A DNA stretch of 64,000 nucleotides from Scyliorhinus canicula (lineage: Eukaryota), in the NCBI RefSeq assembly GCF_902713615.1, contig NC_052171.1, forward strand, positions 7,963,209 to 8,027,208, written 5' to 3'. The notes below the pieces were generated by a model that made no database searches, was not told the origin of the DNA, and worked only from the letters and a program-made list of their open reading frames with translations. Of this stretch, positions 21,685 through 53,711 are shown in pieces; positions within the stretch are counted from its first letter, which is position 1; the number at the start of each line of letters is the position of its first letter. The translations under genes and the position numbers were made by a program.

Positions 21685-21813
<129 letters not shown>

Positions 21814-30829: not shown

Positions 30830-31571
30830 TCACAGACTGGCACGTGCTGCCCGGAAAGCTGCCACCTCCTCGGGTGTCCTCAGATACTGCTCAATTTCAC
30901 TGTCTGATATCTCCTCCTCCCCCGTGATCAGCTCCATGCCATGGCTTCCCTCCGCTTCCGGGCAGGGCTTCCTCCTCTTCCTCTGCGTGAGGCACGGAGG
31001 GAGGAAGACCGGCGCTGTGCGTTTGTGCGCCGACCCCGCGGGACTCGGCTGGTCCTGAAGAGAGGGCCCGGTGTCCTCGCCCTCCCAACCTCTGCTGCCC
31101 TCGCCCCCGTCCGTTTCCATTCCTTTGCTGGGGCCGGTCTGCCCATCTGCGTTCTCCGTCCGCGCGGGTCTTAGCGTCTGTCTGAGCAACAGGACGCGAT
31201 GGCGCAGAATATCGCCGCTGTACTTCACCACAGTCTTGGCGTCGATCCGCTGCGACGCCAGCCAATCCAGCTGCGGCGCCAGCCTGACGAGAATGGCGAC
31301 CATCTCCTTCACCCGCCGCGAGGCGGGCGGGGGCTGCTTGACCCCCGCCAGCTGGCAGAACTTGCCCAGGCTGCACTTCAGGCGATGCTGGGGCAGCAGC
31401 GACTGCCAGGCCAGGTAGGCTGCTGCCGTGACGATGGGCACAGGGTGCCTCCCAGTCACCAGCCAGGTTTCACTGGCCAGCTCCACAAACTGCAGGGCGC
31501 GGTCCACCACCTTGTCTTTGTCCTCCAGAAAGATGGACGGGACTGATGCAGACTTCTGGAACAAATTATAC
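30830..31571 (-). CDS. BRF2: BRF2 last coding exon
   Basis: cag|G TAT...TGA; QFVELASETWLVTGRHPVPIVTAAAYLAWQSL (cyclin fold 2), LPPCL (molecular-pin Cys), EEISDSEIEQYLRTPEEV (TBP anchor). Confidence 0.95.
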
Positions 31572-31789
31572 CTGCGAGGGGGGGGGGGGGGGGGGGAGAA
31601 GAGAAAAACAATCAGGGTCTCAGTGGGCAGGTAATACACCGGAGATCACAATCCCGACACACCCCATCACCTCACACACACACACACACACACACACCAA
31701 CGACCCGCTCCCGGACGCTCAGGTTGGATTGTACCAAGATCACTTGACCCCGATCGCATTACAGACTTGATTCTAACACGGGTAAGATC

Positions 31790-32960
31790 TGAACTCCAGA
31801 GGTGAGACAACAATGGCTGCCCTTGACATCAAGGCAGCACTTCAAAGTGAGGAATCAAGGAGCCCTGGCTAAACTGGAGTCAATGGGTATCAGGGAGAAA
31901 AGTCTCTGTTGGTTGGAGTCATTCCCGGCACAAAGGAAGATGGTTGTGGTGGTTGGAGGTCAATCATCTCAGCTCCAGGACATCACTGCAGGAGTTCCTC
32001 AGGGGGGTGTCCTAGGCCCCAACCATCTTCAGCTGCTTCATCAATGACCGTCCCTCCATCATAAGGTCAGAAGTGGGGATGTTCACTAATCACTGCACAA
32101 TGTTCAGCAACATTCGCGACTCCTTAGATAATGAAGCAGTCCATGTCCAAATGCAGCAAGACCTGGACAATATCCAGGCTTGGGGCTGGCAAGTGGCAAG
32201 TTACATTCGCGCCACACAAGTGCCAGGCAATAACTATCTCCAACAAGACAGGATCTAATAACCGCCCCCTGACATTCAATGGAATTACCATCACTGAATC
32301 CCCCACAATCAACATCCTGGGGAGTTACCATTGACCAGACACTGAACTGGACCCAGCCATATAAATACTGTGGCTACCAGAGCAGGTCAGAGGCTGGGAA
32401 TCCTGCGGAGAGTAACTCACCTCCTGACTCCCCCCAAAGCCTGTCCACCATCTACAAGGCACAAGTCAGGAGTGTGAGGGAATACTCTCCACTTGCCTGG
32501 ATGAGTGCAACAACTACACCATCCAGGACAAACTAGGGGATTTTCACAGAAACTTCATTGCAGTTTTAATGTAAGCCTACTTATGACAATAATAAAGATT
32601 ATTATTTGAAAGCGGCCCACTTGATGGGCACCCCATCCACAAGCATTCACTCCCTCCCCCACCGACGCACAGTGGCAGCCGTGTGTACCATCTACAAGAT
32701 GCACTGCAGCAACTCACCAAGGCTCCTTAGGCAGCACCTTCCAAACCCACGGCCTCTACCATCTAGAAGGACAAGGGCAGCAGATACCTGGGAACCCCAC
32801 CACCTGGAGGTTCCCCTCCAAGTCACTCACCGCCCCGACTTGGAAATATATCGGCTGTTCCTTCACTGTCGCTGGGTCAAAGTCCTGGAACTCCCTCCCT
32901 AACAGCACTGTGGGTGTACCTACACCACACGGACTGCAGCGGCTCAAGATGGCGGCTCAC
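31790..32960 (+). mobile_element. CR1/L2-clade LINE 3' part
   Basis: Highly similar to 9240-10460. Confidence 0.88.
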
Positions 32961-33238
32961 AACCAGTGGTGCAGGTCAAAGGTCAGTGAACAACAGCGAG
33001 AGGGTCAGCACAGTCCAACCAGCAGCTATATCTCACCAGCTGACCTACTCCGCATTTGCAGTGTTTGCTGATGGGAGTTCCTTTAGCTGAAGCTTTAGTT
33101 TGTTTTGTTTTGGAGTTTAGATGTAACACCACAGTGTGGCCTGCTCCAGGATATTCTGCGTATTCCTGAAGGTGATCGGAATGGACAGAGTTTGTGCAAG
33201 AACCGGGCGCCACTGCTCATCAACGAGCAGCAGTATTA

Positions 33239-33696
33239 GGGACTGGATTCTCCATTTCAGGGATTATGTCTCCACGCCGTCATGAAAACTGTGGCGTCAA
33301 ACTTAAGGCCCCTTATTCACAGCCCTGCAGGGGGCCGTCATGAAGCTCACGGCTCCAGCTGCCGATGCGCCCCCCCCCCCCCCCCCCCCGCCCCGCACTT
33401 CCGGGTCAGAGGCAGCCGCTGTGCTCCATGGCGGACTCGGACTGCGGAGCTGGACCGCGTTAGTAGTTCGATCCATGCCGTCGGGGTGGAGAATAACGGG
33501 GTGGGCCTCTGGCAATGGCTGTAGGTGGGGGATAGGCGGTGCGGCATACCCCCCAGGTACGCCGCTTTTCGGGGGGCCGGAGAATCGAACCGGCGCCGGA
33601 CCCGCTTCCATGCGTGGAGATGGATTCTCTCCCCCCCCCCCCCCCCCGCACCGGACGCGATTTCGGAGTCAGGTGTGGGTGTGGAGAATCCATCCC
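33239..33696. mobile_element. MITE-like non-autonomous DNA element
   Basis: Terminal inverted repeats gggactggattctcc / ggagaatccatccc; GC-rich interior; TSD unclear. Confidence 0.6.
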
Positions 33697-33920
33697 CAGG
33701 AATTTGGACAGGTTAGCCAGTGGGGGCGGGCAATGCCAGTGGTCTGGGAGCGGGGACCCAGCCTCAGCTGTGGCGATACAGACCCCATTTCATCGGAGGC
33801 CAATGTGTGCCAATCCTCGGAGCTGGTTTAGTTAACAGTGGCAGCACCGACGCTGTTTGAACAGCGGAGACAAGAGTTGTGCGCTGGGAGGTCAGGAAGG
33901 ATAAGAGGGGACATACTGAC

Positions 33921-34242
33921 CCGTCACAGTGAGTTTTCACCAGGTCCAGCAGGCTCAGAGTGGGGATGTCCAGGTTCAGCTCCTTCACCAGCTGCTGGTA
34001 GACTGTTGAGAAAAGAGTGGGCTCCACGTGAAGGAGGGAGCAGATGGTGCTCATGGTCAGGGGCCAGTTGTGCTGGCGACAGGCGACGTGAACACAGCAG
34101 CCCACCAGGGCTTCCTTCTTCTCCAGAGTGACGTGCAGGAAGCTCGGATGCTCATAGGCCCTCAGGTAGAGTTCGCTGGCCGTGTCCTCCACGACGGGGC
34201 GCACACGGAGAATCCGGCAGAGGTCACGGACTCGCATCTGAC
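33921..34242 (-). CDS. BRF2: BRF2 exon (cyclin fold 1)
   Basis: cag|GT...GG|gtcagt; 322 nt; RVRDLCRIL...KKEALVGCCVHVACRQHNWPLTM. Confidence 0.95.
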
Positions 34243-34539
34243 CTGAGCGACGGGCGGGGGGGGTGAGAGAGAAGGGGGGGAGAGAGAGAGGGGGTGTGTG
34301 TGAGAGAGAGAGGGGGAAAGAGAGAGGGAGTGAGAGAGAGACAGAGAGTGAGTCACAACCGGAGTCACCGAGGGGAGAAGGATTACTTTAGGGACCTGGC
34401 TGCAGGCGATATTATACTAAAAGCAATATTGAACAGCATCTTGCATTCAAGTCAACACGGGGGGGGGGGGGGGGGGGGGGGGGCACGGGTCAGCCGCAAG
34501 GAGGGAGGGTTGGCCATAGGGTCGGCACTGGGGGGGGGG

Positions 34540-35115
34540 GGTACTGAGGGAGGGGCGGCATCGAAGGTATGTCCTTGGTCTCGCAGGGTAGACATCGAGA
34601 CCAAGGTTCGGCAAGGAGGGAGAACTGGCATCGAGGGTGCGTCCGTGCTGTTGGAGGGTGGGCAGGGAGGGAGGGCTGGCATCGAGGGTGAGTCCATGCT
34701 GTTGGAGGATGCGTCCATGCTGTTGGAGGGTGGGCAGGGCAGGGAGGGCTGGCATCGAGGGTGCGTCCATGCTGTTGGAGGGTGGGCAGGGAGGGAGGGC
34801 TGGCATCGTGGGTGAGTCCATACTGTTGGAGGGTGGGTCCATGCTGGTGGAGGGTGGGCAGGGAGGGCTGGCATCGAGGGTGCGTCCATGCTGTTGGAGG
34901 GTGGGCAGGGAGGGCTGGCATCGAGGGTGCGTCCATGCTGTTGGAGGGTGCGTCCATGCTGTTGGAGGGTGGGCAGGGAGGGAGGGCTGGCATCGAGGGT
35001 GCGTCCATGCTGTTGGAGGGTGGGCAGGGAGGGAGGGCTGGCATCGAGGGTGTGTCCAAGCTGTTGGAGGGTGGGCAGCAAAGGAGGACCAGCATCGGGG
35101 GTGGACCATGCTGTC
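34540..35115 (+). repeat. ~47-51-bp G-rich minisatellite followed by a DeuSINE-like body
   Basis: Unit gagggtgcgtccatgctgttggagggtgggcagggagggagggctggcatc. Confidence 0.9.
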
Positions 35116-35535
35116 AGAGGATCAGCACCGAGGGAATTGCATTGACGGAGGTGCTGGGTTTTAAATGAGACTTCAAACAGAGGCCGTGTGTGCATTCTCA
35201 GGAGGGCTTAAAAGATCCCCTGGTATTATTTGAAGAACATGGAAGTTCTCCGTTCACTCATCAATATTCTACCCTCCAACAACATTATTAAACTGCTCAT
35301 TCTTCTATTTGTGCACGCACTAACCGACTGCTGTATTTTCCACATTACAGAAACAACTATAACTTAGAAAAATCCTGAGGTCGTGGAGGAATGAGAGAAC
35401 TGCACGACTATTAATCCACAAAAATTTCAAAATTCCTTTTTGGGAATGAACATGCATATTTTGTGAATCATGGCAATTATTTGTGGTGGAGTTGTGAGGA
35501 ACATTGGTTGAGACGGTGGTGTCAATAAACACGGA

Positions 35536-36225
35536 GGGTAGCATGGTGGCGCAGTGGGTTAGCGCTGCTGCCTCACGGCGCCGGGGACAACGGGTTCGAT
35601 CCCGTCCCCGGGTCACTGTCCGTGTGGAATTTGCACGTTCTCCCCGTGTCTGCGTGGGTCTCACCCCCACAACCCAAATATGTGCAGGGTAGGTGGATTG
35701 GCCACGCTAAATTGCCTCTTGAGTGGGAAAAATTAATTGGGTACTCTAAATTTTAAAAATAAACAACCACTCTGGTCTCAGCTATCAATCCATCTGCCTC
35801 AAGGGCTAACCACAGACTTCGCATAACCACTCTTTCTCCGTATGGAGTGCAATCCGGAGCTTTTTAAATCGGCTACTTGATGTGTCGAGAATTACTCCAT
35901 TGTCTTGAGGGAAGTGGGTGGTGTGGTTTAATCGCGCCTTCAAGGCCAGAGATTGAAGCACGAGACCCGTTACTATACCAGCTGGGGCCGGCACATGGTT
36001 AGCACTGCTGCCTCACGGCGCTGAGAACCCCGGTTCAATCCCAGCCCCGGCGCGGAGAACCCCGGTTCAATCCCAGCCCCGGGTCACTGTCCGTATGGAG
36101 TTTACACATTCTACCCGTGTTTGTGTGGGTCTCATCCCCACAATCCAAAAAGATGTGCAGGGTAGGTGGATGGGCCACGTTAAATTGCCCCTTAATTGAA
36201 AATAAAATAATTGGGTACTCTAAAT
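35536..36225 (+). mobile_element. Two HE1-like SINEs (35536-35755, 35985-36225)
   Basis: tRNA head plus core; the second has a duplicated B-box segment. Confidence 0.8.
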
Positions 36226-36329
36226 TTAGTTAAATAAAATACCAGCGTGCGCAAAGCATCGCCCACCTGCATCAGAACTCTGCTTGAGTGCTTCCTGCAT
36301 TTTCTGCCGCCACTAATCAAGGATCTTAC

Positions 36330-36389
36330 CTTGTATCTGATTACGACAGGGCTTTTTCACCTCTGCTGTGCTCTCGCTGTATCTCACTG
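36330..36389 (-). CDS. BRF2: BRF2 60-nt exon (not in ORF track)
   Basis: cacag|CA GTG...CAA G|gtaag; (A)VRYSESTAEVKKPCRNQIQ(G); phase 1-1 bridges the flanking exons. Confidence 0.88.
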
Positions 36390-36928
36390 CTGTGGAGAAG
36401 GAGTGCAAATAGTACAGTTTAACATTGAGACAAGCCATGCTGCTTAAGTTGTGTGTAGTACAGGTTCAGCACTCGAACCACACTTACAGCACTCGAACCA
36501 CACTTGTTCTCCAAAACAGCCAGAGTGTGGCGACTGGGGGATTTTCACAGTAACTTCATTGCAGTGTGTGGAAACCTAAAATGGGCATCTAGAGCTGGGA
36601 TACCTGACATAAAAAATTTTAAGTGTCCCATCAAAATTGCTGCAGGTACCTCATTAATTCAGTCAGCAGACAAGTGGCCCCTTGAAAGTTGATTACATTG
36701 TCTGGAATTTAATCGATTTCCTGAGATCACCCTCCCTTTTGTATTGTGACACACACACCTTTTGTCAATAACAGCATCACTGAGAGCAATGACGTCAGCC
36801 GATCACCTCAGCTTTTCTGTTGCTAATATACTTATCACTATAGAATTACCGCAGAATGCATTGACGTCATCTGATCACCTCTCCTTTGTATCAAAATTAT
36901 ACCTTTGTCTTAGTCTAAGCCCAGTAAG

Positions 36929-37130
36929 AAGTCTTACAACACCAGGTTAAAGTCCAACCGGTTTGTTTCAAACATTAGCTTTCGGAGCACTGCTCCTTCC
37001 TCAGGTGAATGAAGAGGTATGTTCCAGAAACATATATATAGACTGATTCAAAGATGCCAGACAATGCTTGGAATGTGAGCATTTGTAGGTAATCAAGTCT
37101 TTCCAGATCCAGAGATAGGGGTAGTCTCAG
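36929..37130. mobile_element. Penelope-like terminal fragment (second copy at 14879-14960)
   Basis: Shared acaacaccaggttaaagtccaac...agctttcggagc...ctccttcctcaggtga; family call from memory. Confidence 0.5.
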
Positions 37131-37244
37131 CCAACAGCAAGGCTCAGAAATTATCGATGTTACTATCTGTAGAGGGATGTTTTTTTTTTAATATGCATCC
37201 TTTTGTGTGTCAGAGTGTGTCCGGCTGCGACCTTTTTTTTTTTA

Positions 37245-37576
37245 AGAACAGTACAGCACAGAACAGGCCCTTCGGCCCTCAATGTTGTGCCGAGCAATGA
37301 TCACCCTACTCAAGCCCACGTATCCACCCTATACCAGTAACCCAACAACCCCCGTTAATATTATTTTTTAGGACACTAAGGACAATTTAGCCTGGCCAAT
37401 CCACCTAACCCGCACATCTTTGGACTGTGGGAGGAAACCGGAGCACCCGGAGGAAACCCACGCACACACGGGGAGGACGTGCAGACTCCGCACAGACAGT
37501 GCCCCAGCCGGGAATCGAACCTGGGACCCTGGAGCTGTGAAGCATTGATGCTAACCACCATGCTACCGTGCTGCCC
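37245..37576 (-). mobile_element. Full-length HE1/V-type SINE
   Basis: Reverse complement of the 50181 and 54877 copies. Confidence 0.85.
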
Positions 37577-37735
37577 ACTTTGATTGACGTGGTCATTCTC
37601 TTTGTGCAAGTAAAACTTAATAAACTTAAATGTGTTGTTATCTGATACATTTTCAGTCTAAAAGTCTTACTCGGATGTCAAAGTTTTCCGCAAGTGTTAA
37701 TGTAAGCCCTTTGCGTGGGTTTCGCCCCAACAACC

Positions 37736-38683
37736 TGTAGCCATGCTGGCCACGCAAAATGGACACTGAGCCAAAGTAAAATGGAAGACAGAAGGAAAAG
37801 CCTGTTTAGTGAGAGCAGACAGTCTGCTCTCAACTAATTAGCATTTTGCAAGCAGCAAACCAGTTTCTGGCCAGGTGCAAGATCTCCAAGCCAAAGGTGT
37901 TAATGGCAAAGCGCTTAGCATTCTGATGAGGCAGCCCAGATCCAGGCACGAACAATGGCAACATTTCCATCTCAATGTAACACTTGATTGGTTGCGCAGA
38001 CAGGATGGCACCAAAGTAACGAATATCGAAACCACCCCCCAACACCGAGGAAGGCCCTCGCATTGGAGGATTTCGAAGGTAACCGTTTGGAAACGCTCCA
38101 ATCGGTACCGAAAGGTAGAGCCCGCCTATAAGGGGGCAAGGACATTAGAGAGGGGTATAAAGGCAAATTCCCCATCTAGCCCGGTCTGTTAAACCCGTGC
38201 TCCGGCCCTGATAGACATCTTGCATCCTGACTCCAGCCGTTGAGCACCAGCCGCCGAAACCGTAAGTTCAACGCTCGCTACGCGATCCAAGTCCACTAGA
38301 CCCCCAGTACCAGAACGCTTGCTGAAGGCTGCAGTACAAGACCAGGACGAAGGCCTCGTTCTCTGACCTTGCCTGTTCCTGTTAGATAAGTATTCTGATC
38401 ACTTAAGTTTAGTTATAGCTTAGTCTCTTAGTGTGTGCATGAGTATTTATTATAACTGTATAATAAATATTGATCGTTTGAACCTTACTGATCGGTGTAT
38501 CGTCTTTATTACTTTGAACTTGACCTTGGAATACTTGTGACGGTGTCTATACGGCACCTGGCGACTCCAGAGCTGAATAAATACATAGAACAGAGCCTAG
38601 TAGTGTTAAGCACACGTCGAACACGGAGGCGTGTTAATACACTCCAATAAACGCGTTTTACAACCACAGTAAAACGTGCAACA
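37736..38683 (+). mobile_element. Solo LTR (948 bp), Gypsy/ERV-type
   Basis: TGTAGC...GCAACA ends; perfect 4-bp TSD aacc; splits a SINE; internal CCAAT, TATAAA and AATAAA. Confidence 0.85.
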
Positions 38684-38856
38684 AACCCAAAAAGGTGTGC
38701 AGGCTAGGTAGATTGGCCACGCTAAATTGCCCCTTAATTGGAAAAAAAAAATTAATTGGGTACACTAAATTTATTTAAAAAAAGAAAAAATGTAAGCCTA
38801 CTTGTGACGCTAATAAAGATTTTTTTTGTACTCCTTTTTCATATTTTCATAAACCA

Positions 38857-39040
38857 GGGGCTGGTTTAGCTCACTTGGCTAAATCGCTGGCTTTTAAAGC
38901 AGACCAAGCAGGCCAGCAGCACGGTTCGATTCCCGTACCAGCCTCCCCGAACAGGCGCCGGAATGTGGCGACTAGGGGCTTTTCACAGTAACTTCATTGA
39001 AGCCTACTCGTGACAATAAGTGATTTTCATTTTCATTTCA
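38857..39040 (+). mobile_element. Second tRNA-derived SINE family
   Basis: ggggctggtttagctca...ggttcgattcccgtacc...ttcattttcatttca; reverse copies at 6072, 11065 and 42413. Confidence 0.8.
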
Positions 39041-39902
39041 TATTTTCCTCCAAAGTTACATCCAACAATAATCAGGAACGAATGTAATGTCAATCCCCAT
39101 ATCAAAAGCAACGATCCCGTTCTCCCACAAAACCCCAGACATTAGCCCTCATGTTAACATAAACAAATGGGAAAAAGGAATCAGGAATCACCCATAGTCA
39201 CCATTAACACACACCGCCCCCTCTTCCCCCCACCTAATGTTCAACGTGATCCAATTCTCAAAAGTGCATAATAACGCCCATGAATTGTAGAACCCCTCCA
39301 TCCTTCCCCTCAGTTCAAATTTGACCCTTTCAAGCGTCAAGAATTCCAGCCACGCCAGGGCACAGGGTGGAGAGGTTGATCTCCACCCTAACAGGATCCA
39401 CCTTCAGGCGATCAACGAGGCAAAGGCTACAACATCTGCCCCGTTTCCAACCCCGGCTGGTCCGACACCCCGAATGTGGCCTCCCGAGGGCCCGGGTCCA
39501 GTTTCACGTGCACCACTTTAGAGATTACCCTAAACACCTCCTTCCAGTAATCCTCCAGCTTTGGACAGGACCAAAACATATGAATGTGGTTTACGTGCGC
39601 CCCACCACCCCAACATTCACACACATCTTCTACCCCCTCAAAGAGCCGGCTCATCCTTGCCCTCGTGAGGTGTGCTCTATACACCTCTAATAAAGATGAA
39701 CCGGGAGCGAATCCTCCACACATCCCGCCGACTGCGACGTGCGACGATGACACCATAGGGCCGGGGGGGGGGGGGGGGGGGGAAGCCAGCAGGCGCCCCG
39801 TGCCGCCTTCGTGTGGGGGTGCCGAGGGCAGCGGGAAGGTGCAGTCGTTCCCCCCTCCAAAAAAAATGAGGAGGGGGGCCAAGAGGCGAGGAGGGTCCGT
39901 AC

Positions 39903-40074
39903 CTTGGGAGAAGCATTCCTCGGAGCGGGTGGACGTGAGCACCCCCTCCGTCAGCAGGAAGCCGCAGTCGGTGCACACCAGGTGGCTCTGGCTGTAGTGG
40001 GAATCCTCCTCCACGTGAGAGGAGCCACATTCTGGGCAGCTGCCTCTTCCAGACATCTTCTGGGATGCTTGACC
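39903..40074 (-). CDS. BRF2: BRF2 Zn-ribbon exon (conserved ATG at 40056; acceptor at 40074)
   Basis: [32 protein letters not shown] (CxxC...CxxC); donor G|gtacgg; strong polypyrimidine acceptor 18 nt upstream of the ATG. CDS from 40056 is 1278 nt, 425 aa. Confidence 0.93.
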
Positions 40075-40917: not shown

Positions 40918-41009
40918 GTGAGACCTGGGGCCTTCGGGGGGTTGGGTTGGGGTGAGGCCTGGGGCTGTCTCTAACCTCTCCTCCCATCTCTCTCTCTCCC
41001 TTTGTGTAG

Positions 41010-43991: not shown

Positions 43992-44067
43992 GTAAGCTTG
44001 CCACCCGCCCGGGGCTGAGGGTCCACCCGCCCGGGGCTGTGGTGGCAGAGTGGGCATTCGATTAAAT

Positions 44068-44290: not shown

Positions 44291-44713
44291 ATAAAACCAA
44301 CATTAATATTAAAGGGAGGAGCCTGAGATTTAGTTAAATGCTTCCCCCCCCCCCCAGAGTGATCAGGTTCAAGGTTGGCTCTTTGCCTGTCGCACAATGT
44401 TGGTCACCTCAAGCTGCTGGATGTCCCCGGGTGGAAGCGAGACACCTTTCGGGATGTTCCACCGTTTTCAAGTGAACAAAGTCCTTTTTTTTCTGAGGTG
44501 TTTGTCACTGTTGTACTGCAGGACAATGTGCCAGCATGTGGACAGCTAGCTCCCACACATAGCAATGTGAGAACGGGGAGATTCTGTCTCTCAAACGGTG
44601 CTGGTTGAAGAATACATGTTGGCGAGGGTACCGGTCAGAACTCGCCTGTTCTTTGAATCGTGCCATAGAGTTTTTCATATCTGTCATGTGATCTCCTAAA
44701 GTGGCGTCCTCGA

Positions 44714-45872
44714 CAGTACTGTGCACCCTCAGTACTGACCCTCTGACAGTGCGGCACTCCCTCAGTACTGACCCTCTGACAGTGCAGCACTCCCTCAGTA
44801 CTGACCCTCTGATAGTGCGGCACTCCCTCAGTACTGACCCTCTGACAGTGCGGCACTCCCTCAGTACTGACCCTCTGACAGTGCAGCACTCCCTCAGTAC
44901 TGACCTCTCTGACAGTGTGCAGCACTCCCTCAGTACTGACCCTCTGACAGTGCGGCACTCCCTCAGTACTGACCCTCTGACAGTGCAGCACTCCCTCAGT
45001 ACTGACCCCCTGACAGTGCAGCACTCCCTCAGTACTGACCCTCTGACAGTGCAGCACTCCCTCAGTACTGACCCTCTGACAGTGCAGCACTCCCTCAGTA
45101 CTGACCCTCTGACAGTGCGGCACTCCCTCAGTACTGACCCTCTGACAGTGCGGCACTCCCTCAGTACTGACCCTCTGACAGTGCAGCACTCCCTCAGTAC
45201 TGACCCTCTGACAGTGCGGCACTCCCTCAGTACTGACCCTCTGACAGTGCGGCACTCCCTCAGTACTGACCCTCTGACAGTGCGGCACTCCCTCAGTACT
45301 GACCCTCTGACAGTGCGGCACTCCCTCAGTACTGACCCTCTGACAGTGCGGCACTCCCTCAGTACTGACCCTCTGACAGTGCAGCACTCCCTCAGTACTG
45401 ACCCTCTGACAGTGCAGCACTCCCTCAGTACTGACCCTCTGACAGTGCAGCACTGCCTCAGTACTGACCCTCTGACAGTGCAGCACTCCCTCAGTACTGA
45501 CCATCTGACAGTACAGCACTCCCTCACTACTGACCCTCTGACAGTGCATCACTCCCTCAGTACTGACCCTCTGACAGTGCAGCACTCCCTCAGTACTGAC
45601 CCTCTGACAGTGCAGCACTCCCTCAGTACTGACCCTCTGACAGTACAGCACTCCCTCACTACTGACCCTCTGACAGTGATCATTCCCTCAGTACTGATCC
45701 TCTGACAGTGCGGCACTCCCTCACTACTGACCCTCTGACAGTGCATCACTCCCTCACTACTGACCCTCTGACAGTGCATCATTCCCTCAGTACTGATCCT
45801 CTGACAGTGCGGCACTCCCTCACTACTGACCCTCTGACAGTGCATCACTCCCTCAGTACTGACCCTCTGACA
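44714..45872 (-). repeat. 33-bp minisatellite, reverse orientation (~35 copies)
   Basis: Reverse complement of the 15546 unit; Deu-like body at 44500-44710. Confidence 0.96.
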
Positions 45873-46013
45873 TTGTGCTTCCGGAGTTGAGTTGAATGTG
45901 AACGTGCCAGGGCCTGGCTGTTGGCAGACACACTCCCATCTTTCAGGCGCGGGATGCAGGGATGGAGCTGTAAGCCGTATGTTGAAGCTTTCTCTGTGCG
46001 TATCTATTTGTAG

Positions 46014-46074
46014 ATAAACTGGTTGGAGTTCACTGCACTCACGGAGTTAATCGGACTGGCTATCTAATTTGCAG
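46014..46074 (+). CDS. DUSP11: DUSP11 exon 5, catalytic P-loop
   Basis: tgtag|AT...AG|gtatgt; [19 protein letters not shown] matches the HCxxxxxR RNA-triphosphatase signature HCTHGxNRTG. Confidence 0.96.
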
Positions 46075-46663
46075 GTATGTTGTCGGTTGATCAATAAGGA
46101 CTTGGGCTTGAGGAATTCAGTAATTTTCCCCCACCTCTTGATTTTGCAAGGAGCTGGAACCTTCCTTTTGCTTGAGGGAGGCAGTCGACTCCCAAACCCC
46201 ACTTCCCCCTGGCAGCAGGGTGGCACAGCGGTCAACGCTGTAAGACGTGCAGGCTAGGTGGACTGGCCACGCTAAATTGCCCCTTAATTGGGGAAAAAAA
46301 ATTGGGCACTCTAAATTTATTAAAAACAAAGTAATCCAATTGGTTATGCGAGTGATTGGGCGGAAATGGGAGACCTTGCACGCTGGGCCTTGACCGAAAG
46401 GCGGGCATTTCTATTGTGCCTTTCGCAACCTCGGAGCGACTCCGAATGCTTTACACGCAGTGAAGGACAATGTGGTGTCTACGCTGCTGGATGTTGGAGA
46501 AAATACGGCGATCAGTTTGTGCACAGCGAGCAGCCATGTCCGAATAAGGAGCTAATTTTTTTTCCTGACCTTGATTGAGGGATGAATGTTGGTCAGGACA
46601 CTGGGTGTGGGTGGTTGGGGCCTCTTACTGATTTCACCCCCTCCACTCTCGGCTTTGTTTCAG

Positions 46664-46710
46664 GTACCTGATCGACGTGGATGGGATGGACCCTCGCAAT
46701 GCAATCGATT
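46664..46710 (+). CDS. DUSP11: DUSP11 exon 6
   Basis: ttcag|G...T|gtaagt; YLIDVDGMDPRNAID. Confidence 0.92.
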
Positions 46711-46793
46711 GTAAGTTCTTGCTCTTCCCCTCTTGGCTGTTGCACCGATTGCCGCTTTGACAAGCTCCTAAACTTTGGTTCTTTCCCCTCCAG

Positions 46794-46869
46794 TGTTCAA
46801 TAAATCCAGAGGACATCCGATAGAGAGACCGAACTACATACAGGATCTGCTGCAAGGGCAAAACAGGAG
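46794..46869 (+). CDS. DUSP11: DUSP11 exon 7
   Basis: tccag|TG...AG|gtaagg; FNKSRGHPIERPNYIQDL. Confidence 0.93.
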
Positions 46870-47174
46870 GTAAGGACTCCGGCTCCAGAAAGGTTAATAA
46901 CCAGAACTTGGCCTGTTCCGGTGCCCAGGTGCTGACAGGGCTGTGGCACAGTTGCAGAATGATTCCCCTCCCCTATTGCCGTACTCCATTTTGCCCATCG
47001 TGTTCCTGCTGGGTCTGTACACCCGTGAATGCGAATCGACAACCTGGGGAGCTTTGCAGGTTTAAAACCCTCCTCGTGCAGCGAGGGTCAAGCTCGGGAA
47101 TAAGGAAGGGGGGCAGCCGCAATGTTGGGGCCTCCTGACAGCCAGCTGGAGATAGAGGAGCAGATATGGAGACA

Positions 47175-48065
47175 CAAAGATTGGTGGAGTTGTGTGGATG
47201 GTGAAGAGGATTGTCAGAGGCGACCGTGGGATATAGATGGACTGGAGACTTGGGCGGAAAGCTGGAAGATGGCGTTTAATCCGCACAAATGTGAGGTAGT
47301 GTATTTTGGAAGGTTTAATACAGATGGGAATTATACAGTAAATGAGAGAACCGTAAGAGCATTGACAGGCTGAGGGATCTGGGTGTGCAGGTCCACAGAT
47401 CACTGAAAGTGGCAACGCAGGTGGAGAAGGCAGACGGCATGCTTGCCTTCATTGGATGGGGCATTGAGTATAAAAACTGGCAGTGTTATGCTGCTGCTGT
47501 ACAGGGCCTCAGTTAGGCCACTTTTGGAATATTGCGTACAGTTCTGGTCGCCACACTACCAGAAGGATGTGGAGGCTTTGGAGAGGGTGCAGAGGAGGTT
47601 TACTAAGGATGTTGCCTGGTCTGGAGGGTGTTAGCTATGCGGAGAGGTATGAGGATAACCTCAGATTGTTTTGACGGGCGAGACGGAGATTGAGGGGTGA
47701 CCTGTTCGAGGTTTACAAAATTCTGAGGGGCATGGGCAGAGGGGGCACCAGAAGGTTTTTTTCCCAGGGTGGGAGAGTCAATTACGAGGGGGCATCGGTT
47801 TAAGGTGCGAGGGGCAAAGGTTAGAGGAGATGTACGAGGCAGGTTTTTTTTACACAGAGGGTGCTGAGTGGCTGGAACTCGCTGCCGGAGGAGGTGATGG
47901 AAGCACGGCGATTAAGGGGCATCTTGACGAATACATGAATAGGATGGGAATAGAGGGATACGGACCCTGGAAGTGTAGAAGATTTTAGTTTAGACGGGCA
48001 GCATGGTCGGCACAGGCTTGGAGGGCCGAAGGGCCTGTTCCTGTGCTGTACTTGTTCTTTGTTCT
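47175..48065 (+). mobile_element. CR1 LINE 3' fragment
   Basis: WAESWKMAFNPHKCEV and VRPLLEYCVQFWSPHYQKDVEALERVQRRFT motifs. Confidence 0.9.
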
Positions 48066-48194
48066 GTTCTTTGTTCCACCCCTGCCTTTTGCTCGGGTTA
48101 TATGTTCCTCGTTGCACAGTTCTCACAGTGAGAAGACATGTTGGCTCAACTTCCCTCTGTTTAATCCCCCCCCCCCCCCACCCCTGCCCCGCAG

Positions 48195-48284
48195 CAATAA
48201 TGGAACTGGTGTACCTGCTCCATGCCCAGGAACGAGGCAGAAGGAACATCACAGGCCGCAGGCTGTGTTCAAGCAGAGACAGAG
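48195..48284 (+). CDS. DUSP11: DUSP11 exon 8 (variable tail)
   Basis: cgcag|C...AG|gtgtgt; 90 nt, phase 2-2, open; NNGTGVPAPCPGTRQKEHHRPQAVFKQRQ. No homology support. Confidence 0.65.
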
Positions 48285-49669
48285 GTGTGTATGAATGTGT
48301 GATTACTCAGTTTGCTTTATGGTGACATCCTCAAACTGTCCTGACGAGACGGAGTGCAAATACCTGATTATTTTTCCCCCCCAAATCCTGAATCTAAACT
48401 TTGTTCAAATCTGCAACAGTTGATGACAAATCTACTCTCCCCATTCGTACCTCCCCTCATCCCACTTTTTGATCATATCTGGCCCCATTGCTACCCAGCC
48501 TCGCCTCGCACCGTCACCCTTTTTTGAGCTGTCCTGCCCTCTCCCCATCACAAACTTTCCCTTTTGCTCTTCCCCCCCCCCCCCCCCCCTCTTCCTGCCA
48601 CATCTCGTGCTGCCTTTCCGTTTCCCGTTCCTGTCTGTAGAGCGAGCTGGGTTAACAGTGGTGTGAGATAGGGACGGCACAGTGGCTAGCACTGCTGCCT
48701 CGCGGCGCCGAGGTCCCGGGTCCGATCCCGGATCACCGTCCGTGTGGAGTTTGCGCATTCTCCCCCGTGTCTGCGTGGCTCTCACCCCCCACAACCCAAA
48801 AAGATGTGCAGGGTAGTTGGATTGGCCAGGCTAAATTGCCCCTTAATTGGGAATAAAACCAGTGGTGTGAGATTCAGAATTCTTTGGGAATTAGCGGGGA
48901 TGAATCCAGAGTGGCTGATACCAAGAGCGGGAGATTTGGGGCGAAGGGGGGGGGTGCATTAAAATCAGCCCCTAAAAGGCGCGAGGTCATGACCCAGGCG
49001 GAGATCACCATGTTGAAGAATAGACAAGACAGATTGAAGGCAAAGGGTGTCTGGTAGGTAGACGCAAGCACGGGTTTGGTGGGCCAAATGGCCTGCATTT
49101 GTATTTTGAGCTGTGATATTCTGTTGTATTGAGTGTGGTCCAGAAGGTTGTATGCAGGGACCGTTCGACTTTGGTGTACCTTTCCAGAAGGATGCTGCGT
49201 TGCTGTCTTGGTAGCTGCGGCTTACAGAGCCTGTTGTGTGACTCTGTCTGATTCTGTCACAGGGGTGCAGGGCCCTCAGCTGTCGCACTGCCCCACCTTG
49301 CCCTTGTTGTGCAGTGTTTGTGACGGCAACAGTCAGCCGGGAGGCACAGGCTAGATCTGCAATGGAGTCCCACTGGGTCACCGCACTCTCCTGTGTATCC
49401 ATCTGTTTGTCGAATCTTGTATAGCCCGTTGCGAAATAAACCCATCAGATGTTGCGTTCCTTTGTCAACAGGAAGGGTTGTCATCGCAGTTATTCAAACA
49501 GCACTCACTCTCTCTCTCGATGTAGCTATCTTGCGCTCGCTCCTTTGGTGTTCCGAAAAATGAATGTTCCGCAAGCATTTATATTCAAAACCTATTCAGA
49601 ATATTGAACCCGACAGGCGGGAAAATGACCCTTACCACTGACTGACTCAACTCACTTACCTCCTGCTCA

Positions 49670-50560
49670 TGGCCATCTAAGGAAATTCGGCATGTCCACA
49701 CTGACTTACCACCACGGAAAGCATCCTATCGGGCTGCATCACGGTCTGGTATGGCAACCGCTCGGCCCAAAACCGTAAGCAACTACAGAGAGTCGTGAAC
49801 ACAGCCCAGTCCACCACACGAACCCGCCTCCCATCCATTGATTCCATCTACACCTCCCGCTGCCTGGGGAAAGCGGGCAGCATAATCAAAGACCCCTCCC
49901 ACCCGGCTTACTCACTCTTCCAACTTCTTCCATCGGGCAGGAGATTCAGAAGTCTGAGAACACGCACGAACAGACTCAAAAACAGCTTCTTCCCCACTGT
50001 CACCAGACTCCTAAACAACCCTCTTATGGACTGACCTCATTAACACTACACCCTATATGCTTCACCCACTACCGGTGTCTATGTATTTACATTGTGGATC
50101 TTGTGTTGCACTATTATATATTTTGATTTCATGTACTAAGTGATCTGTTGAGCTGTATGCAGAAAAATACTTTTCACTGTAGGGCAGCACGGTAGCATGG
50201 TGGTTAGCATAAATGCTTCACAGCTCCAGGGTCCCAGGTTCGATTCCCGGCTGGGTCGCTGTCTGTGTGGAGTCTGCACGTCCTCCCCCTGTGTGCGTGG
50301 GTTTCCTCCGGGTGCTCCGGTTTCCTCCCACAGTCCAAAGATGTGTGGGTTAGGTGGATTGGCCATGCTAAATTGCCCGTAGTGTCCTAATAAAAGTAAG
50401 GTTAAGGGGAGGGGGGGGGGGGTTGTTGGGTTACGGGTATAGGGTGGCTACGTGGGTTTGAGTAGGGTGATCATGGCTCGGCACAACATTGAGGGCCGAA
50501 GGGCCTGTGCTGTACTGTTCTATGTTCTATGTACCTCGGTACACGTAACAATAAACAAAT
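49670..50560 (+). mobile_element. LINE 3' end (Rex1/Babar-like) with SINE inserted at 50181-50530
   Basis: IIKDPSHPAYSLFQLLPSGRRFRSLRTRTNRLKNSFFP motif; the tail resumes after the SINE; reverse copy at 63615-64000. Confidence 0.8.
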
Positions 50561-50934
50561 CCACATCCATCTGCCTGCAGCTTGCCTTCTCTCCAGACTC
50601 TCGAGCTCCTCACTCCTGCTTGCCACTTCCCTCAATGACTCCCCTGCCCGACACTCCCCTCCCGCCCACCACCCTCTCACTGAGGGGGCAGGTCAGCAAG
50701 TGGGGCGGGAGGGGGTAGAGGGGTACGGACAGAGTGGCTCAGCGATAGGGAAGTGGCGGGGTTGGAGTGGGTTAGGGAGGAGGGAGCGCTCCAAGATGGC
50801 AATATTGTGGGGGGAGAAGTACTGGGGAAAATTGTACAGTCGCAGGGATGGTCTGCACAAGTCATCCAATGTTGGAGGAATCGGACTGAACCAGTAGTCT
50901 ACTGTTATAGGGGAATAGTGAGGATGCTCTGCCA

Positions 50935-52013
50935 GTGCTGAGGGAGTGCCGCACTGTCAGAGGGTCAGTACTGAGGGAGTGCCGCACTGTCAGAGGGTCA
51001 GTACTGAGGGAGTGCCGCACTGTCAGAGGGTCAGTACTGAGGGAGTGCCGCACTGTCAGAGGGTCAGTACTGAGGGAGTGCCGCACTGTCAGAGGGTCAG
51101 TACTGAGGGAGTGCGCACTGTCAGAGGGTCAGTACTGAGGGAGTGCCGCACTGTCAGAGGGTCAGTACTGAGGGAGTGCCGCACTGTCAGAGGGTCAGTA
51201 CTGAGGGAGTGCTGCACTGTCAGAGGGTCAGTACTGAGGGAGTGCTGCACTGTCAGAGGGTCAGTACTGAGGGGAGTGCCGCACTGTCAGAGGGTCAGCT
51301 ACTGAGGGAGTGCAGCACTATCACAGGGTCAGTACTGAGAGAGTGCCGCACTGTCAGAGGGTCTGTACTGAGGGAGTGCTGCACTGTCAGAGGGTCAGTA
51401 CTGAGGGAGTGCGCACTGTCAGAGGGTCAGTACTGAGGGAGTGCTGCACTGTCAGAGGGTCAGTACTGAGGGAGTGCTGCACTGTCAGAGGGTCAGTACT
51501 GAGGGAGTGCTGCACTGTCAGAGGGTCAGTACTGAGGGAACGCTGCACTGTCAGAGGGTCAGTACTGAGGGAGCGCTGCTCTGTCAGAGGGTCAGTACTG
51601 AGGGAGTGCCGCACTGTCAGAGGGTCAGTACTGAGGGAGTGCTGCACTGTCAGAGGGTCAGTACTGAGGGAGTGCCGCACTGTCAGAGGGTCAGTACTGA
51701 GGGAGTGCTGCACTGTCAGAGGGTCAGTACTGAGGGAGTGCTGCACTGTCAGAGGGTCAGTACTGAGGGAGTGCTGCTCTGTCAGAGGGTCAGTACTGAG
51801 GGAGTGCCGCACTGTCAGAGGGTCAGTACTGAGAGAGTGCCGCACTGTCAGAGGGTCAGTACTGAGGGAGTGCCGCACTGTCAGAGGGTCAGTACTGAGG
51901 GAGTGCCGCACTATCAGAGGGTCAGTACTGAAGGAGTGCAGCACTATCAGAGGGTCAGTACTGAAGGAGTGCAGCACTGTCAGAGGGTCAGTACTGAGGG
52001 AGGGCTGCACTGT
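50935..52013 (+). repeat. 33-bp minisatellite (~32 copies)
   Basis: Same unit as 15546; Deu-like tail at 52025-52170. Confidence 0.96.
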
Positions 52014-52354
52014 TGAGCACTACTGGAAGAAGAGAAGACAAGTTCTTTGCAATGTCCAGGCCAATATTTAACTCAACCAACACTTAAAACAAACGAACTG
52101 GCCAGTTTGGTCGGTGTGGTTTGTGGGATATTGCTGACGCACAATATTTACCTTCGTAACAGTATCTGCCTTTGGCCCATTGCAGTCAGCTGACAGGTTT
52201 AAAATGGAGGGACGTTGGTTTGCCGATGTTGGAAATGTTCCCTTCTCTGTGACACCTCGCCATATATTGTGCAGTTACTGGGAAATACAGCGATAGATTT
52301 TGACGGTGCTCCAGTATGTAATCTGTGAATAATGCAGTCACTTTTCTCTTGCAG

Positions 52355-53711
52355 ACCGTACCAATTGAAATGTCCCACTCGGAATGGCTATCGTGAGTTC
52401 AGCCAATCGGCCTGCCCAGCTCTGTCTGCTCAATCCTCCGGACAGCATCGCAATGGACGAAGGTTTGGGACTGGCGCTGTGCACCAATCAGTGCGTCAGA
52501 ATGGCAATGTCCAGCCATATTCCAACAATGAATACGGAACGGAGGAATTGTCCTGGAGGAGTGGTCAGCCCGCGGCCTCACGGTGGAGCGGTCAATCTGA
52601 AGCCTCACAGTGGAGCGGTCAGCCCGCGGCCTCACAGTGGAGCGGTCAGCCCGAAGCCTCACGGTGGAGCGGTCAGCCCGAAGCCTCACGGAGGAGCGGT
52701 CAGCCCGAAGCCTCACGGTGGAGCGGTCAGCCCGAAGCCTCACGGTGGAGCGGTCAGACCGCGGACACACAGTGGAGCGGTCAGACCGCGGCCGTGCGGT
52801 GGAGCGATCAGGCCGAAGCCTCACAGTGGAGCGGTCAGTCTGAGGCCTTGCGGTGGAGTGGTCAGCCCGCGGCCTCACAGAGGAGCGGTCAGCCCGAGTC
52901 CTCACAGTGGAGCGGTCAGCCCGAGTCCTCACAGTGGAGCGGTCAGCCCGAGTCCTCGCGGTGGAGCGGTCAGTCCGAGGCCTCACGATGGAGTGGTCAG
53001 CCCGCGGCCTCACAGTGGAGCGGTCAGCCCGAGTCCTCACGGTGGAGCGGTCAATCCGAGGCCTCACAATGGAGCGGTCAGCCCACGGCCTCACGGTGGA
53101 GCGGTCAGTCCAAGGCCTCACGGTGGAGCGGTCAGTCCGAAGCCTCACAGCAGAGCGGTCAGCCCGCGGCCTCACAGCAGAGCGGTCAGCCCGCGGCCTC
53201 ACAGTGGAGCGGTCAGCCCGCGGCCTCACAGCAGAGCGGTCAGCCCGCGGCCTCACAGCGGAGTGGTCAGCCCGCGGCCTCACAGTGGAGCGCTCAGCCC
53301 GCGGCCTCGCAGCGGAGCGGTCAGCCCGCGGCTTCACGGTGGAGCGGTCAGTCCAAGGCCTCACGGTGGAGCGGTCAGTCCGAAGCCTCTCAGCAGAGCG
53401 GTCAGCCCGCGGCCTCACAGTGGAGCGGTCAGCCCGCGGCCTCACAGCAGAGCGGTCAGCCCGCGGCCTCACAGTGGAGCGGTCAGCCCGCGGCCTCACA
53501 GTGGAGCGGTCAGCCCGCGGCCTCACAGTGGAGCGGTCAGCCCGCGGCCTCACAGTGGAGCGGTCAGCCCGCGGCCTCACAGCGGAGCGGTCAGCCCCAA
53601 CCCCCCTGGCAGAGTTATCAGCCACCACAAGCTGGACGGGGCAGGAGAGACTGGAAAGTGAACGCTGGCGGTCAGGACAGACTGAGTGCACATCGACAAT
53701 GGGACAACTGA
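52355..53711 (+). CDS. DUSP11: DUSP11 terminal exon with 9-aa tandem repeat
   Basis: cttttctcttgcag|A CCG in phase 2 matches the exon 7 and exon 8 donors; 1357 nt to TGA; total CDS 1989 nt (662 aa from 40892). Confidence 0.7.
52558..53600 (+). repeat. 27-bp coding minisatellite (~38-39 copies)
   Basis: Unit TGGAGCGGTCAGCCCGCGGCCTCACAG, with no indels. Confidence 0.95.

What the first reader, a model, noticed from the sequence alone, without database searches (positions are those of the whole stretch)
30830..53711. BRF2 and DUSP11 head-to-head: a candidate co-regulated 'make and disarm' module for 5'-triphosphate Pol III RNA
Seen: the two genes diverge from one CpG-rich segment. The BRF2 exon-1 donor (40756, -) lies 136 bp from the conserved DUSP11 ATG (40892, +). 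Established: BRF2-TFIIIB initiates type-3 Pol III genes (U6, 7SK, RPPH1, RMRP, Y RNA, tRNA-Sec), whose transcripts begin with 5'-ppp. DUSP11 converts 5'-ppp RNA, including Pol III transcripts, to 5'-p, which lowers RIG-I activation. In human the two genes are on different chromosomes (8p11 and 2p13). Inference: a shared promoter could scale triphosphatase supply with Pol III output, and might be an ancestral gnathostome arrangement lost in mammals.
Basis: partly seen in the sequence, partly recalled or inferred. Interest (0 to 1): 0.85.

Follow-up and report, generated by a model that had tools for sequence, protein, structure and literature searches.

The report
Catshark BRF2–DUSP11 divergent gene pair
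In the small-spotted catshark the Pol III initiation factor gene BRF2 and the RNA 5'-triphosphatase gene DUSP11 sit back to back on one CpG-rich promoter; sharks and rays share the arrangement and the bony vertebrates sampled do not, so a functional link stays an untested idea.

Summary
The window is from Scyliorhinus canicula. My BRF2 model is 425/425 aa identical to that species' annotated protein.

**Confirmed**
- BRF2 (- strand, stop 30830) and DUSP11 (+ strand, stop 53711) are real, intact and divergent.
- RNA contigs place BRF2's outermost 5' end at or beyond 40506 and DUSP11's at or before 40706, so they are at most about 200 bp apart inside a CpG island.
- That interval is filled by nine same-strand AAGATGGCG (YY1-consensus) motifs at about 32-bp spacing.

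**Not supported**
All RNA depth there belongs to contigs spliced into DUSP11 exon 2.
- The real BRF2 5' exon is 40342 to at least 40506, spliced to 40074.

**Synteny**
- DUSP11<>BRF2> <FHIP2-like also occurs in Heptranchias, Narcine and Rhinoraja. Start-codon spacing ranges from 0.8 to 7.7 kb, and Hemitrygon has no annotated gene within 10 kb upstream.
- Ostrich, caecilian, gar, paddlefish and arowana have no DUSP11 beside BRF2. Four of them show RAB11FIP1>BRF2 upstream, and ADGRA2 or a 7TM receptor gene lies downstream in all five. A hemichordate shows no neighbour.
- "Ancestral, lost in mammals" is therefore unsupported. The polarity is unresolved.

The "make and disarm" coupling is untested. 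About 10% of vertebrate genes are in head-to-head pairs anyway. This is a new member of a known kind, of modest interest. The scan noted a similar YY1-site array at another bidirectional promoter in this genome.

The parts
30830..40506 (-). BRF2 gene (TFIIIB 50 kDa subunit). CDS exons 40056-39903, 36389-36330, 34242-33921, 31571-30830 (stop 30832-30830). The upstream exon 1a and an unspliced 5' extension are listed separately.
   Evidence: The model translates to 425 aa with no internal stop and is 100% identical to S. canicula P0293 residues 17-441. PDB 4roc/8ity E 1e-35. tblastn against Narcine BRF2 covers all four exons. Splice sites were read.
40342..40506 (-). BRF2 5' exon 1a, with an alternative ATG at 40371-40369. 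Its donor GT is at 40341-40340 and it is spliced to the acceptor at 40074. The 5' end is at least 40506.
   Evidence: RNA contig X4 record 22 joins 40073 to 40341-40454. X1 record 7 covers 40341-40506. The junction encodes [10 protein letters not shown]|[11 protein letters not shown], which is the N-terminus of NCBI isoform X2 P0293.
40401..40726 (+). Array of nine YY1-consensus-like motifs (AAGATGGCG, at most 1 mismatch), all on the + strand, about 32 bp apart. It is partly a decayed 33-bp tandem repeat (40586-40699). It fills the core of the divergent promoter.
   Evidence: 9 of the window's 18 matches fall in these 326 bp; about 0.06 would be expected from shuffles. ATGGC is invariant in 9/9 units while the flanking columns agree in only 3-8 of 9, mostly 4-6. 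TRF finds period 33.
40280..40920 (.). CpG island spanning both genes' 5' ends. It includes an ETS-type CCGGAAG at 40800 and a TATAAA at 40456.
   Evidence: GC 0.64 and CpG o/e 0.76, against a window-wide o/e of 0.50.
40706..53711 (+). DUSP11 gene (PIR1 RNA 5'-triphosphatase). Exon 1 runs from 40706 or earlier to 40917, with ATGs at 40892 and in frame at 40790. The other exons are 41010-41085, 42970-43101, 43868-43991, 46014-46074, 46664-46710, 46794-46869 and 52355-53711 (stop 53709-53711). The P-loop is [11 protein letters not shown].
   Evidence: RNA contigs start at 40706 (X15) and 40806 (X1) and carry the GT..AG joint 40917>41010 in three runs. The 632-aa model has no internal stop. Exons 3 and 4 hit only DUSP11 chains 4jmj/4nyh/4mbb. 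The model is collinear with S. torazame DUSP11 P0364 across every junction, the N-terminal extension and the C-terminal end.
52558..53597 (+). 27-bp x 38.5 in-frame minisatellite that encodes the 9-aa WSGQPxASx repeat tail of DUSP11.
   Evidence: TRF. The same tail with fewer copies, and the same C-terminal end, is present in S. torazame P0364.
8313..21816 (+). 3' exons of an FHIP2-like (RAI16-like domain) gene, convergent with BRF2. It is BRF2's conserved downstream neighbour in cartilaginous fishes.
   Evidence: tblastx blocks collinear with the RAI16-like gene of Callorhinchus L010 and Rhinoraja L009.

Best explanation
This is an ordinary but genuine bidirectional promoter pair in the small-spotted catshark. 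BRF2 and DUSP11 are transcribed divergently from one CpG island of about 640 bp.

The core of that island is a decayed 33-bp tandem array. It keeps nine same-strand YY1-consensus motifs and is flanked by an ETS-type CCGGAAG near the DUSP11 start.

Shown here:
- The gene identities.
- The divergent orientation.
- RNA 5' ends at most about 200 bp apart.
- The motif array.

Inferred: YY1- and ETS-type factors bound to the shared island drive both directions, so the two genes probably share basal, housekeeping-type regulation as most head-to-head pairs do.

The adjacency is a synteny feature of elasmobranchs, present in sharks and rays, within a block FHIP2-like / BRF2 / DUSP11. It is absent from the bony vertebrates sampled. 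The spacing has drifted from under 1 kb to over 7 kb among elasmobranchs, which argues that tight promoter sharing is not under strong constraint. I therefore read the BRF2-DUSP11 functional pairing as most likely a coincidence of linkage rather than a selected 'make and disarm' module.
For: - Gene models and identities.
- RNA contigs: BRF2 exon 1a is 40341-40506 and is joined to 40073. DUSP11 contigs start at 40706 and 40806 and carry the 40917>41010 joint.
- The exon 1a junction reproduces the N-terminus of NCBI isoform X2.
- CpG island.
- Motif array.
- Elasmobranch synteny: Heptranchias, Narcine, Rhinoraja, with DUSP11 exons confirmed by tblastn.
- Spacing and separate CpG islands in Rhinoraja. 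No annotated gene within 10 kb upstream in Hemitrygon.
- Bony vertebrates, no DUSP11 exon in any of them by tblastn: ostrich RAB11FIP1>BRF2> <ADGRA2; caecilian with no annotated upstream gene and ADGRA2 downstream; gar, paddlefish, arowana.
- Hemichordate: no neighbour within 10 kb.
- About 10% of genes are in head-to-head pairs less than 1 kb apart (PMC2077898, PMC4089025).
Against: - Contigs are not 5'-end maps and carry no strand, so the true TSSs and the exact gap are not fixed.
- No expression correlation was measured. The raw-read run was 3'-biased and nearly empty over this interval.
- The adjacency has persisted across the shark-ray split, which could reflect selection rather than slow elasmobranch genome evolution.
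- Y RNAs and RMRP, both BRF2-dependent, are documented DUSP11 substrates (PMC5066614), so a functional link is not absurd.
- YY1 or ETS binding is inferred from motif matches only.
Confidence: 0.72

Rival explanations
1. The pair is a selected co-regulated 'make and disarm' module: a shared promoter scales DUSP11 triphosphatase supply to BRF2-driven type-3 Pol III output. The arrangement is ancestral to jawed vertebrates and was later lost.
For: - The 5' ends are at most about 200 bp apart in one CpG island.
- The adjacency is kept in sharks and rays.
- DUSP11 acts on the BRF2-dependent Y RNAs and RMRP (PMC5066614, PMC7808613).
- How DUSP11 levels are naturally controlled is an open question (PMC7808613).
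Against: - The adjacency is absent from all five bony-vertebrate lineages sampled and from a hemichordate.
- The spacing is not conserved: 0.8, 1.9 and 7.7 kb, and no annotated gene within 10 kb in Hemitrygon. The skate has two separate CpG islands.
- DUSP11's best-documented substrates also include BRF1-dependent vault and Alu RNAs (PMC5066614). From my own knowledge, not checked here, the most abundant type-3 products U6 and 7SK carry a gamma-methyl cap.
- Head-to-head pairs are common, about 10% of genes, so a post hoc functional story is expected for some of them.
- No co-expression data.
Confidence: 0.12
2. Two abutting but independent promoters. Each gene has its own core promoter and regulators, and the shared CpG island is only physical overlap without shared control.
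For: - Multiple 5' ends are seen for each gene: BRF2 at 40279-86 or beyond and at 40506 or beyond; DUSP11 at 40706 and 40806.
- The ETS motif lies only on the DUSP11 side and the TATAAA at 40456 only inside BRF2 exon 1a.
- In Rhinoraja each gene has its own CpG island 7.5 kb from the other.
- Word depths of the two genes do not track each other in the three contig runs: 29/24/38 against 57/97/306. This is a poor measure.
Against: - The gap of about 200 bp between the contig ends is filled by one homogeneous motif array, leaving little room for two separate core promoters.
- Most pairs less than 1 kb apart share elements and are co-expressed (PMC2077898, PMC4089025).
Confidence: 0.16

Closest known systems
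[quoted passage not shown]
   Same: Divergent protein-coding genes, 5' ends less than 1 kb apart, a CpG island, an ETS CCGGAAG and YY1-type motifs, and housekeeping-type partner genes.
   Different: The core is an unusually dense one-strand array of nine YY1-like sites derived from a 33-bp tandem repeat. The gene pairing itself is seen only in elasmobranchs.
PREPL-C2ORF34 bidirectional pair driven by NRF-2/GABP plus YY1 (PMC2713978)
   Same: A head-to-head pair in which ETS-family and YY1 sites in a short intergenic segment are proposed to drive both directions.
   Different: Factor binding and reporter activity were shown experimentally there. Here there are only motif matches and RNA contigs.
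Osteichthyan BRF2 locus (RAB11FIP1 > BRF2 > < ADGRA2/ADRB3-like, as on human 8p11) and human DUSP11 on 2p13
   Same: Orthologous genes: the same domains (zinc ribbon, TFIIB cyclin repeats, BRF2 C-terminal repeat; the DSPc P-loop HCTHGxNRTG), at about 50-60% identity.
   Different: BRF2 has different neighbours on both sides, and there is no DUSP11 within 10 kb in the five lineages sampled.
YY1-site clusters in tandem-repeat form (for example those described at imprinted loci such as Peg3 and Xist; from my own knowledge, not checked here)
   Same: Many same-orientation YY1 consensus sites embedded in a decayed tandem repeat inside a CpG island.
   Different: There is no evidence of imprinting or allele-specific methylation here. 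The location is a housekeeping-type divergent promoter.

Membership tests
Bidirectional (head-to-head) promoter pair | Two genes on opposite strands, transcribed away from each other | tested here: met
   BRF2 is on the - strand and DUSP11 on the + strand.
Bidirectional (head-to-head) promoter pair | Transcription start sites less than 1 kb apart | tested here: met
   The outermost RNA contig ends are at 40506 (BRF2) and 40706 (DUSP11). These are contigs, not CAGE, so they give minimum transcript extents rather than mapped TSSs.
Bidirectional (head-to-head) promoter pair | Shared cis elements or co-expression demonstrated | not testable with these tools
This needs a reporter assay or an expression atlas.
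BRF2 (TFIIIB 50 kDa subunit) | Zinc ribbon, TFIIB cyclin repeats and the BRF2-type C-terminal cyclin repeat, with the best matches being BRF2 rather than BRF1 or TFIIB | tested here: met
   The identical protein P0293 carries PF08271, PF00382 and PF21886. PDB BRF2 chains score E 1e-35 against TFIIB at 1e-5. The N-terminus has CPECG...CTDCG.
DUSP11 / PIR1 RNA triphosphatase | Cysteine phosphatase P-loop HCxxGxxR(S/T), with specific similarity to DUSP11 | tested here: met
   [11 protein letters not shown] is present in the model. Exons 3 and 4 hit only DUSP11 chains in the PDB. The ortholog P0364 is named RNA/RNP complex-1-interacting phosphatase-like and carries PF00782.
DUSP11 / PIR1 RNA triphosphatase | 5'-triphosphatase activity on Pol III transcripts | not testable with these tools
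   Known for the mammalian enzyme (PMC5066614, PMC7706711). Not assayed for the shark protein.
Conserved, selected functional gene pair ('make and disarm' module) | Adjacency conserved beyond one lineage | tested here: not met
   Present in four elasmobranchs (the window). Absent in ostrich, caecilian, gar, paddlefish, arowana and a hemichordate. The chimaera contig ends 2.4 kb upstream of BRF2, so it is uninformative.
Conserved, selected functional gene pair ('make and disarm' module) | Tight promoter sharing conserved where the adjacency exists | tested here: not met
   ATG-to-ATG spacing is 0.84 kb in catshark, 1.9 kb in Narcine and 7.7 kb with two CpG islands in Rhinoraja. Hemitrygon has no annotated gene within 10 kb upstream.
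Conserved, selected functional gene pair ('make and disarm' module) | Correlated expression above that of other neighbouring pairs | not tested
YY1 binding-site cluster | Matches to the consensus AAGATGGCGGC, clustered beyond chance | tested here: met
   Nine sites lie in 326 bp against about 0.06 expected, and the core ATGGC is invariant.
YY1 binding-site cluster | YY1 occupancy | not testable with these tools
   Needs ChIP or CUT&RUN in catshark cells.

The most novel reading that the evidence does not exclude
The FHIP2 / BRF2 <> DUSP11 block is the ancestral gnathostome, or older, arrangement. Selection has kept it in elasmobranchs because a YY1-array bidirectional promoter couples type-3 Pol III initiation capacity to 5'-triphosphate removal. 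Bony vertebrates broke the link at their base and replaced it with other controls on DUSP11.
Probability: 0.08. Interest if true: 0.6.

Novelty: new member of a known kind. Interest (0 to 1): 0.3.

Why it matters
How cells set DUSP11 levels relative to their load of 5'-triphosphate Pol III RNA is an open question in innate immunity (PMC7808613). If the pair were shown to be co-regulated, elasmobranchs would offer a natural case in which triphosphatase supply is wired to a Pol III initiation factor.

As it stands, the result is mainly a corrected gene-structure and synteny description:
- a true bidirectional promoter in catshark;
- an elasmobranch-wide but loosely spaced adjacency;
- different BRF2 neighbours in cartilaginous and bony vertebrates.

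The dense one-strand YY1-motif array is a convenient handle for testing how such arrays drive divergent transcription.

Tried and rejected
Rejected. RNA depth there is fully explained by DUSP11-spliced contigs. NCBI isoform X2 is explained by exon 1a at 40342.
- **First read-laying run.** That left a single lay, so there is no strand-resolved or 5'-end data. The raw-read run X20 was almost empty over the promoter.
- **tblastx of whole loci against the window.** It was swamped by 33-bp minisatellites and had to be filtered.
- **The YY1 array in other species.**
  - Heptranchias has a 200-N gap exactly at the promoter, and BRF2's ATG exon was not found there.
  - Narcine and Rhinoraja show only scattered CGCCAT/ATGGCG cores.
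  - The array is therefore not shown to be conserved.
- **Polarity of the rearrangement.** The Callorhinchus contig ends 2.4 kb upstream of BRF2 in simple repeats. No cyclostome BRF2 turned up among the cluster representatives I named. The hemichordate locus has no neighbour within 10 kb. Polarity stays unresolved.
- **Shark BRF2 as a different 2R ohnolog retained beside DUSP11.** I considered this because human 8p and 2p13 share ohnolog families (from my own knowledge). It could not be tested with one gene per species. FHIP2B and BRF2 both lie on human 8p, which fits plain orthology.
- **Full-length DUSP11 homolog search from the DUSP11 side.** Not possible.
- **Right-hand neighbour of DUSP11.** The stretch 53.7-64 kb holds only minisatellites, SINEs and LINE fragments.

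Full report
**What is in the window**

Six-frame reading and homology place two intact genes back to back.

BRF2 lies on the - strand. Its four coding exons are 40056-39903, 36389-36330, 34242-33921 and 31571-30830. All have canonical AG/GT borders. The 425-aa translation is 100% identical to residues 17-441 of the protein annotated as 'transcription factor IIIB 50 kDa subunit-like isoform X2' of Scyliorhinus canicula (P0293). That identifies the source organism. The middle exon matches human BRF2 structures (4roc, 8ity) at E about 1e-35, against 1e-5 for TFIIB.

DUSP11 lies on the + strand. Its eight exons run from the ATG at 40892 to the stop at 53709-53711 and give a 632-aa open frame with the P-loop [11 protein letters not shown]. 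Exons 3 and 4 hit only DUSP11/PIR1 chains in the PDB (4jmj, 4nyh, 4mbb). The model is collinear at every junction with the annotated DUSP11 of the congener S. torazame (P0364, 459 aa). That includes the 9-aa repeat tail and the identical C-terminal end.

**The promoter interval and the RNA evidence**

One read-laying run succeeded. It covered three contig runs from different studies and one raw-read run that proved nearly empty here.

DUSP11:
- Contigs begin at 40706 (X15) and 40806 (X1).
- All three contig runs carry the GT..AG joint 40917>41010.

BRF2:
- Contigs end exon 2 at 39903, at the donor.
- Upstream they either run unspliced to 40279-40286 (X15 record 14, X4 record 23) or jump from 40073/4 to 40341 and continue to 40454 (X4 record 22).
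- A separate contig covers 40341-40506 (X1 record 7).
- The sequence shows a GT donor at 40341-40340 and an AG acceptor at 40076-40075 on the - strand.
- The spliced junction encodes [10 protein letters not shown]|[11 protein letters not shown], exactly the N-terminus of NCBI isoform X2.

- In X1 the depth of the 40720-40880 bin is 26.3. That equals the DUSP11 contig's depth times its share of the bin (56.5 x 75/161).
- In X4 that bin has depth 0.6 while BRF2 is at 23.6.

The corrected picture is that BRF2's outermost RNA end is at or beyond 40506 and DUSP11's is at or before 40706. They are at most about 200 bp apart and do not overlap. The canonical ATGs are 836 bp apart. The upstream alternative ATGs (40371 on the - strand, 40790 on the + strand) are 419 bp apart.

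The in-frame ATG at 40790 would add 34 residues. A similar extension is annotated in S. torazame (MAGPGRRALGLLSVARSGRRLWSRG...). It may therefore be the true DUSP11 start for transcripts that begin upstream of it.

**Composition and motifs**

The interval 40280-40920 has GC 0.64 and CpG o/e 0.76, against 0.50 for the whole window, so 'CpG-rich' holds.

Nine matches to AAGATGGCG (at most one mismatch) lie at 40401-40726, all on the + strand, spaced 26-65 bp apart and mostly about 32 bp.
- They are half of all 18 matches in the 64-kb window; about 0.06 would be expected in 326 bp.
- TRF sees a decayed 33-bp repeat over 40586-40699.
- When the nine units are stacked, ATGGC is invariant, while the flanking columns agree in only 3-8 of 9 units, mostly 4-6.
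- AAGATGGCGGC is the YY1 consensus (my own knowledge). Binding is untested.
- An ETS-type CCGGAAG sits at 40800, next to the 40806 contig start, and a TATAAA sits at 40456.

Both ETS/GABP and YY1 are classic components of vertebrate bidirectional promoters (PMC2077898, PMC2713978). I did not test that note.

**Synteny survey**

I used BRF2 proteins from the homology searches to fetch their loci.

| Species (group) | Upstream of BRF2 | Downstream of BRF2 | Notes |
|---|---|---|---|
| S. canicula (catshark, this window) | DUSP11, divergent | FHIP2-like (RAI16-like domain), convergent | ATG-to-ATG 0.84 kb |
| Heptranchias perlo (shark) | DSPc gene, divergent | FHIP2-like | 200-N gap hides both first exons |
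| Narcine bancroftii (ray) | DSPc gene, divergent | FHIP2-like | ATG-to-ATG 1.9 kb |
| Rhinoraja longicauda (skate) | DSPc gene, divergent | FHIP2-like | 7.7 kb; each gene has its own CpG island |
| Hemitrygon akajei (stingray) | no annotated gene within 10 kb | FHIP2-like | no DNA returned |
| Callorhinchus milii (chimaera) | contig ends 2.4 kb upstream, in simple repeats | FHIP2-like | uninformative for DUSP11 |
| Ostrich | RAB11FIP1, same direction | ADGRA2 | |
| Caecilian | no annotated gene | ADGRA2 | no DNA returned |
| Alligator gar | RAB11FIP1 | 7TM receptor gene | |
| Paddlefish | RAB11FIP1 | ADGRA2 | |
| Arowana | RAB11FIP1-like (C2 domain) | 7TM receptor gene | |
| Glandiceps (hemichordate) | no neighbour within 10 kb | none | intronless BRF2 |

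In the three other elasmobranch loci with DNA, tblastn confirmed that the DSPc gene carries DUSP11 exons 2-5. The same tblastn finds no DUSP11 exon in any bony-vertebrate or hemichordate locus for which DNA was returned.

The bony-vertebrate order matches the human 8p11 arrangement, with DUSP11 on 2p13 (my own knowledge).

So the adjacency spans sharks and rays, both branches of living elasmobranchs. It is not a gnathostome-wide feature that mammals lost. Either it arose in cartilaginous fishes or it was broken at the base of bony vertebrates. Without cyclostome data or complete chimaera data the polarity cannot be set.

**How it most likely works**

Shown:
- two divergent genes;
- one CpG island;
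- RNA 5' ends at most about 200 bp apart;
- a dense motif array between and under them.

Inferred:
- Ubiquitous factors of the YY1 and ETS type open the island and fire both directions.
- This gives shared basal expression, as in most pairs of this kind.

About 10% of vertebrate genes sit in such pairs (PMC2077898, PMC4089025), so a partner for BRF2 is unremarkable in itself.

**The functional story**

The story is attractive for two reasons.
- DUSP11 changes the 5' phosphate state of Y RNAs and RMRP, which are type-3, BRF2-dependent products, as well as of vault and Alu RNAs (PMC5066614, PMC7808613).
- How DUSP11 levels are tuned is an acknowledged open question (PMC7808613).

Four points weaken it.
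- Vault and Alu RNAs are BRF1-dependent (my own knowledge).
- U6 and 7SK, the bulk type-3 products, are gamma-methyl capped (my own knowledge).
- The tight spacing is not conserved among elasmobranchs.
- Slow elasmobranch genome evolution can preserve neutral adjacencies.

No paper in the library links the two genes by position; the four papers that mention both do so in other contexts.

**Verdict**

The genes, the orientation and the CpG island are right. The exon-1 donor and the 136-bp figure are wrong. A shared promoter in catshark is likely. The claim 'ancestral, lost in mammals' is not supported. The 'make and disarm' coupling is untested and, in my estimate, unlikely to be a selected feature (about 0.1). 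The finding is a new member of a known kind, a lineage-specific bidirectional gene pair, with a notable YY1-motif array as its core.

Noticed in passing
window 40790-40891: An in-frame upstream ATG at 40790 would add 34 Arg-rich residues (MARPGSRVLGLLSAARSGRRLWSRG...) to DUSP11. A similar extension is annotated in S. torazame isoform X2. DUSP11 contigs start either upstream (40706) or downstream (40806) of it, so long and short protein isoforms may depend on TSS choice. The peptide looks like a targeting or nuclear-localisation segment.
   Followed up: partly
window 52558-53597: The DUSP11 tail is a 27-bp x 38.5 in-frame minisatellite (WSGQPxASx). S. torazame has the same tail with roughly half as many copies and the same C-terminal end, so copy number has changed quickly between congeners. 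Annotated elasmobranch DUSP11 lengths range from 360 to 551 aa.
   Followed up: partly
window 15546-18766, 22626-29935, 44726-45872, 50933-52013; L001 1188-1820: One 33-bp minisatellite family (unit about CACTGTCAGAGGGTCAGTACTGAGGGAGTGCTG) occupies over 12 kb of the window in both orientations. A related array lies in the same DUSP11 intron (between exons 4 and 5) in Heptranchias. Either the array is very old or the family is spread widely through shark genomes.
   Followed up: no
window 39430-40398 (- strand): The retained BRF2 intron 1a is open in frame from the upstream ATG at 40371 through to the canonical Met. Unspliced transcripts, seen as contigs up to 40279-40286, could therefore encode a BRF2 with about 105 extra N-terminal residues. 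This is probably NCBI isoform X1.
   Followed up: partly
window 56623-63303: Downstream of DUSP11 there is no recognisable gene. There are only GC-rich, strongly strand-skewed minisatellites with periods of 27/54, 21 and 112 bp, plus SINE and LINE fragments. The right-hand synteny neighbour could not be set.
   Followed up: no
L008 10001-11269 (Glandiceps talaboti): The hemichordate BRF2-like gene is intronless (422 aa in one exon) and has no annotated neighbour within 10 kb on either side.
   Followed up: no
L009 9800-10100 (Rhinoraja longicauda): The skate BRF2 ATG exon has its own CpG island, with four ATGGCG/CGCCAT cores in 300 bp, 7.5 kb away from the DUSP11 island. YY1-type cores may thus travel with BRF2's own promoter rather than with a shared one.
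   Followed up: no
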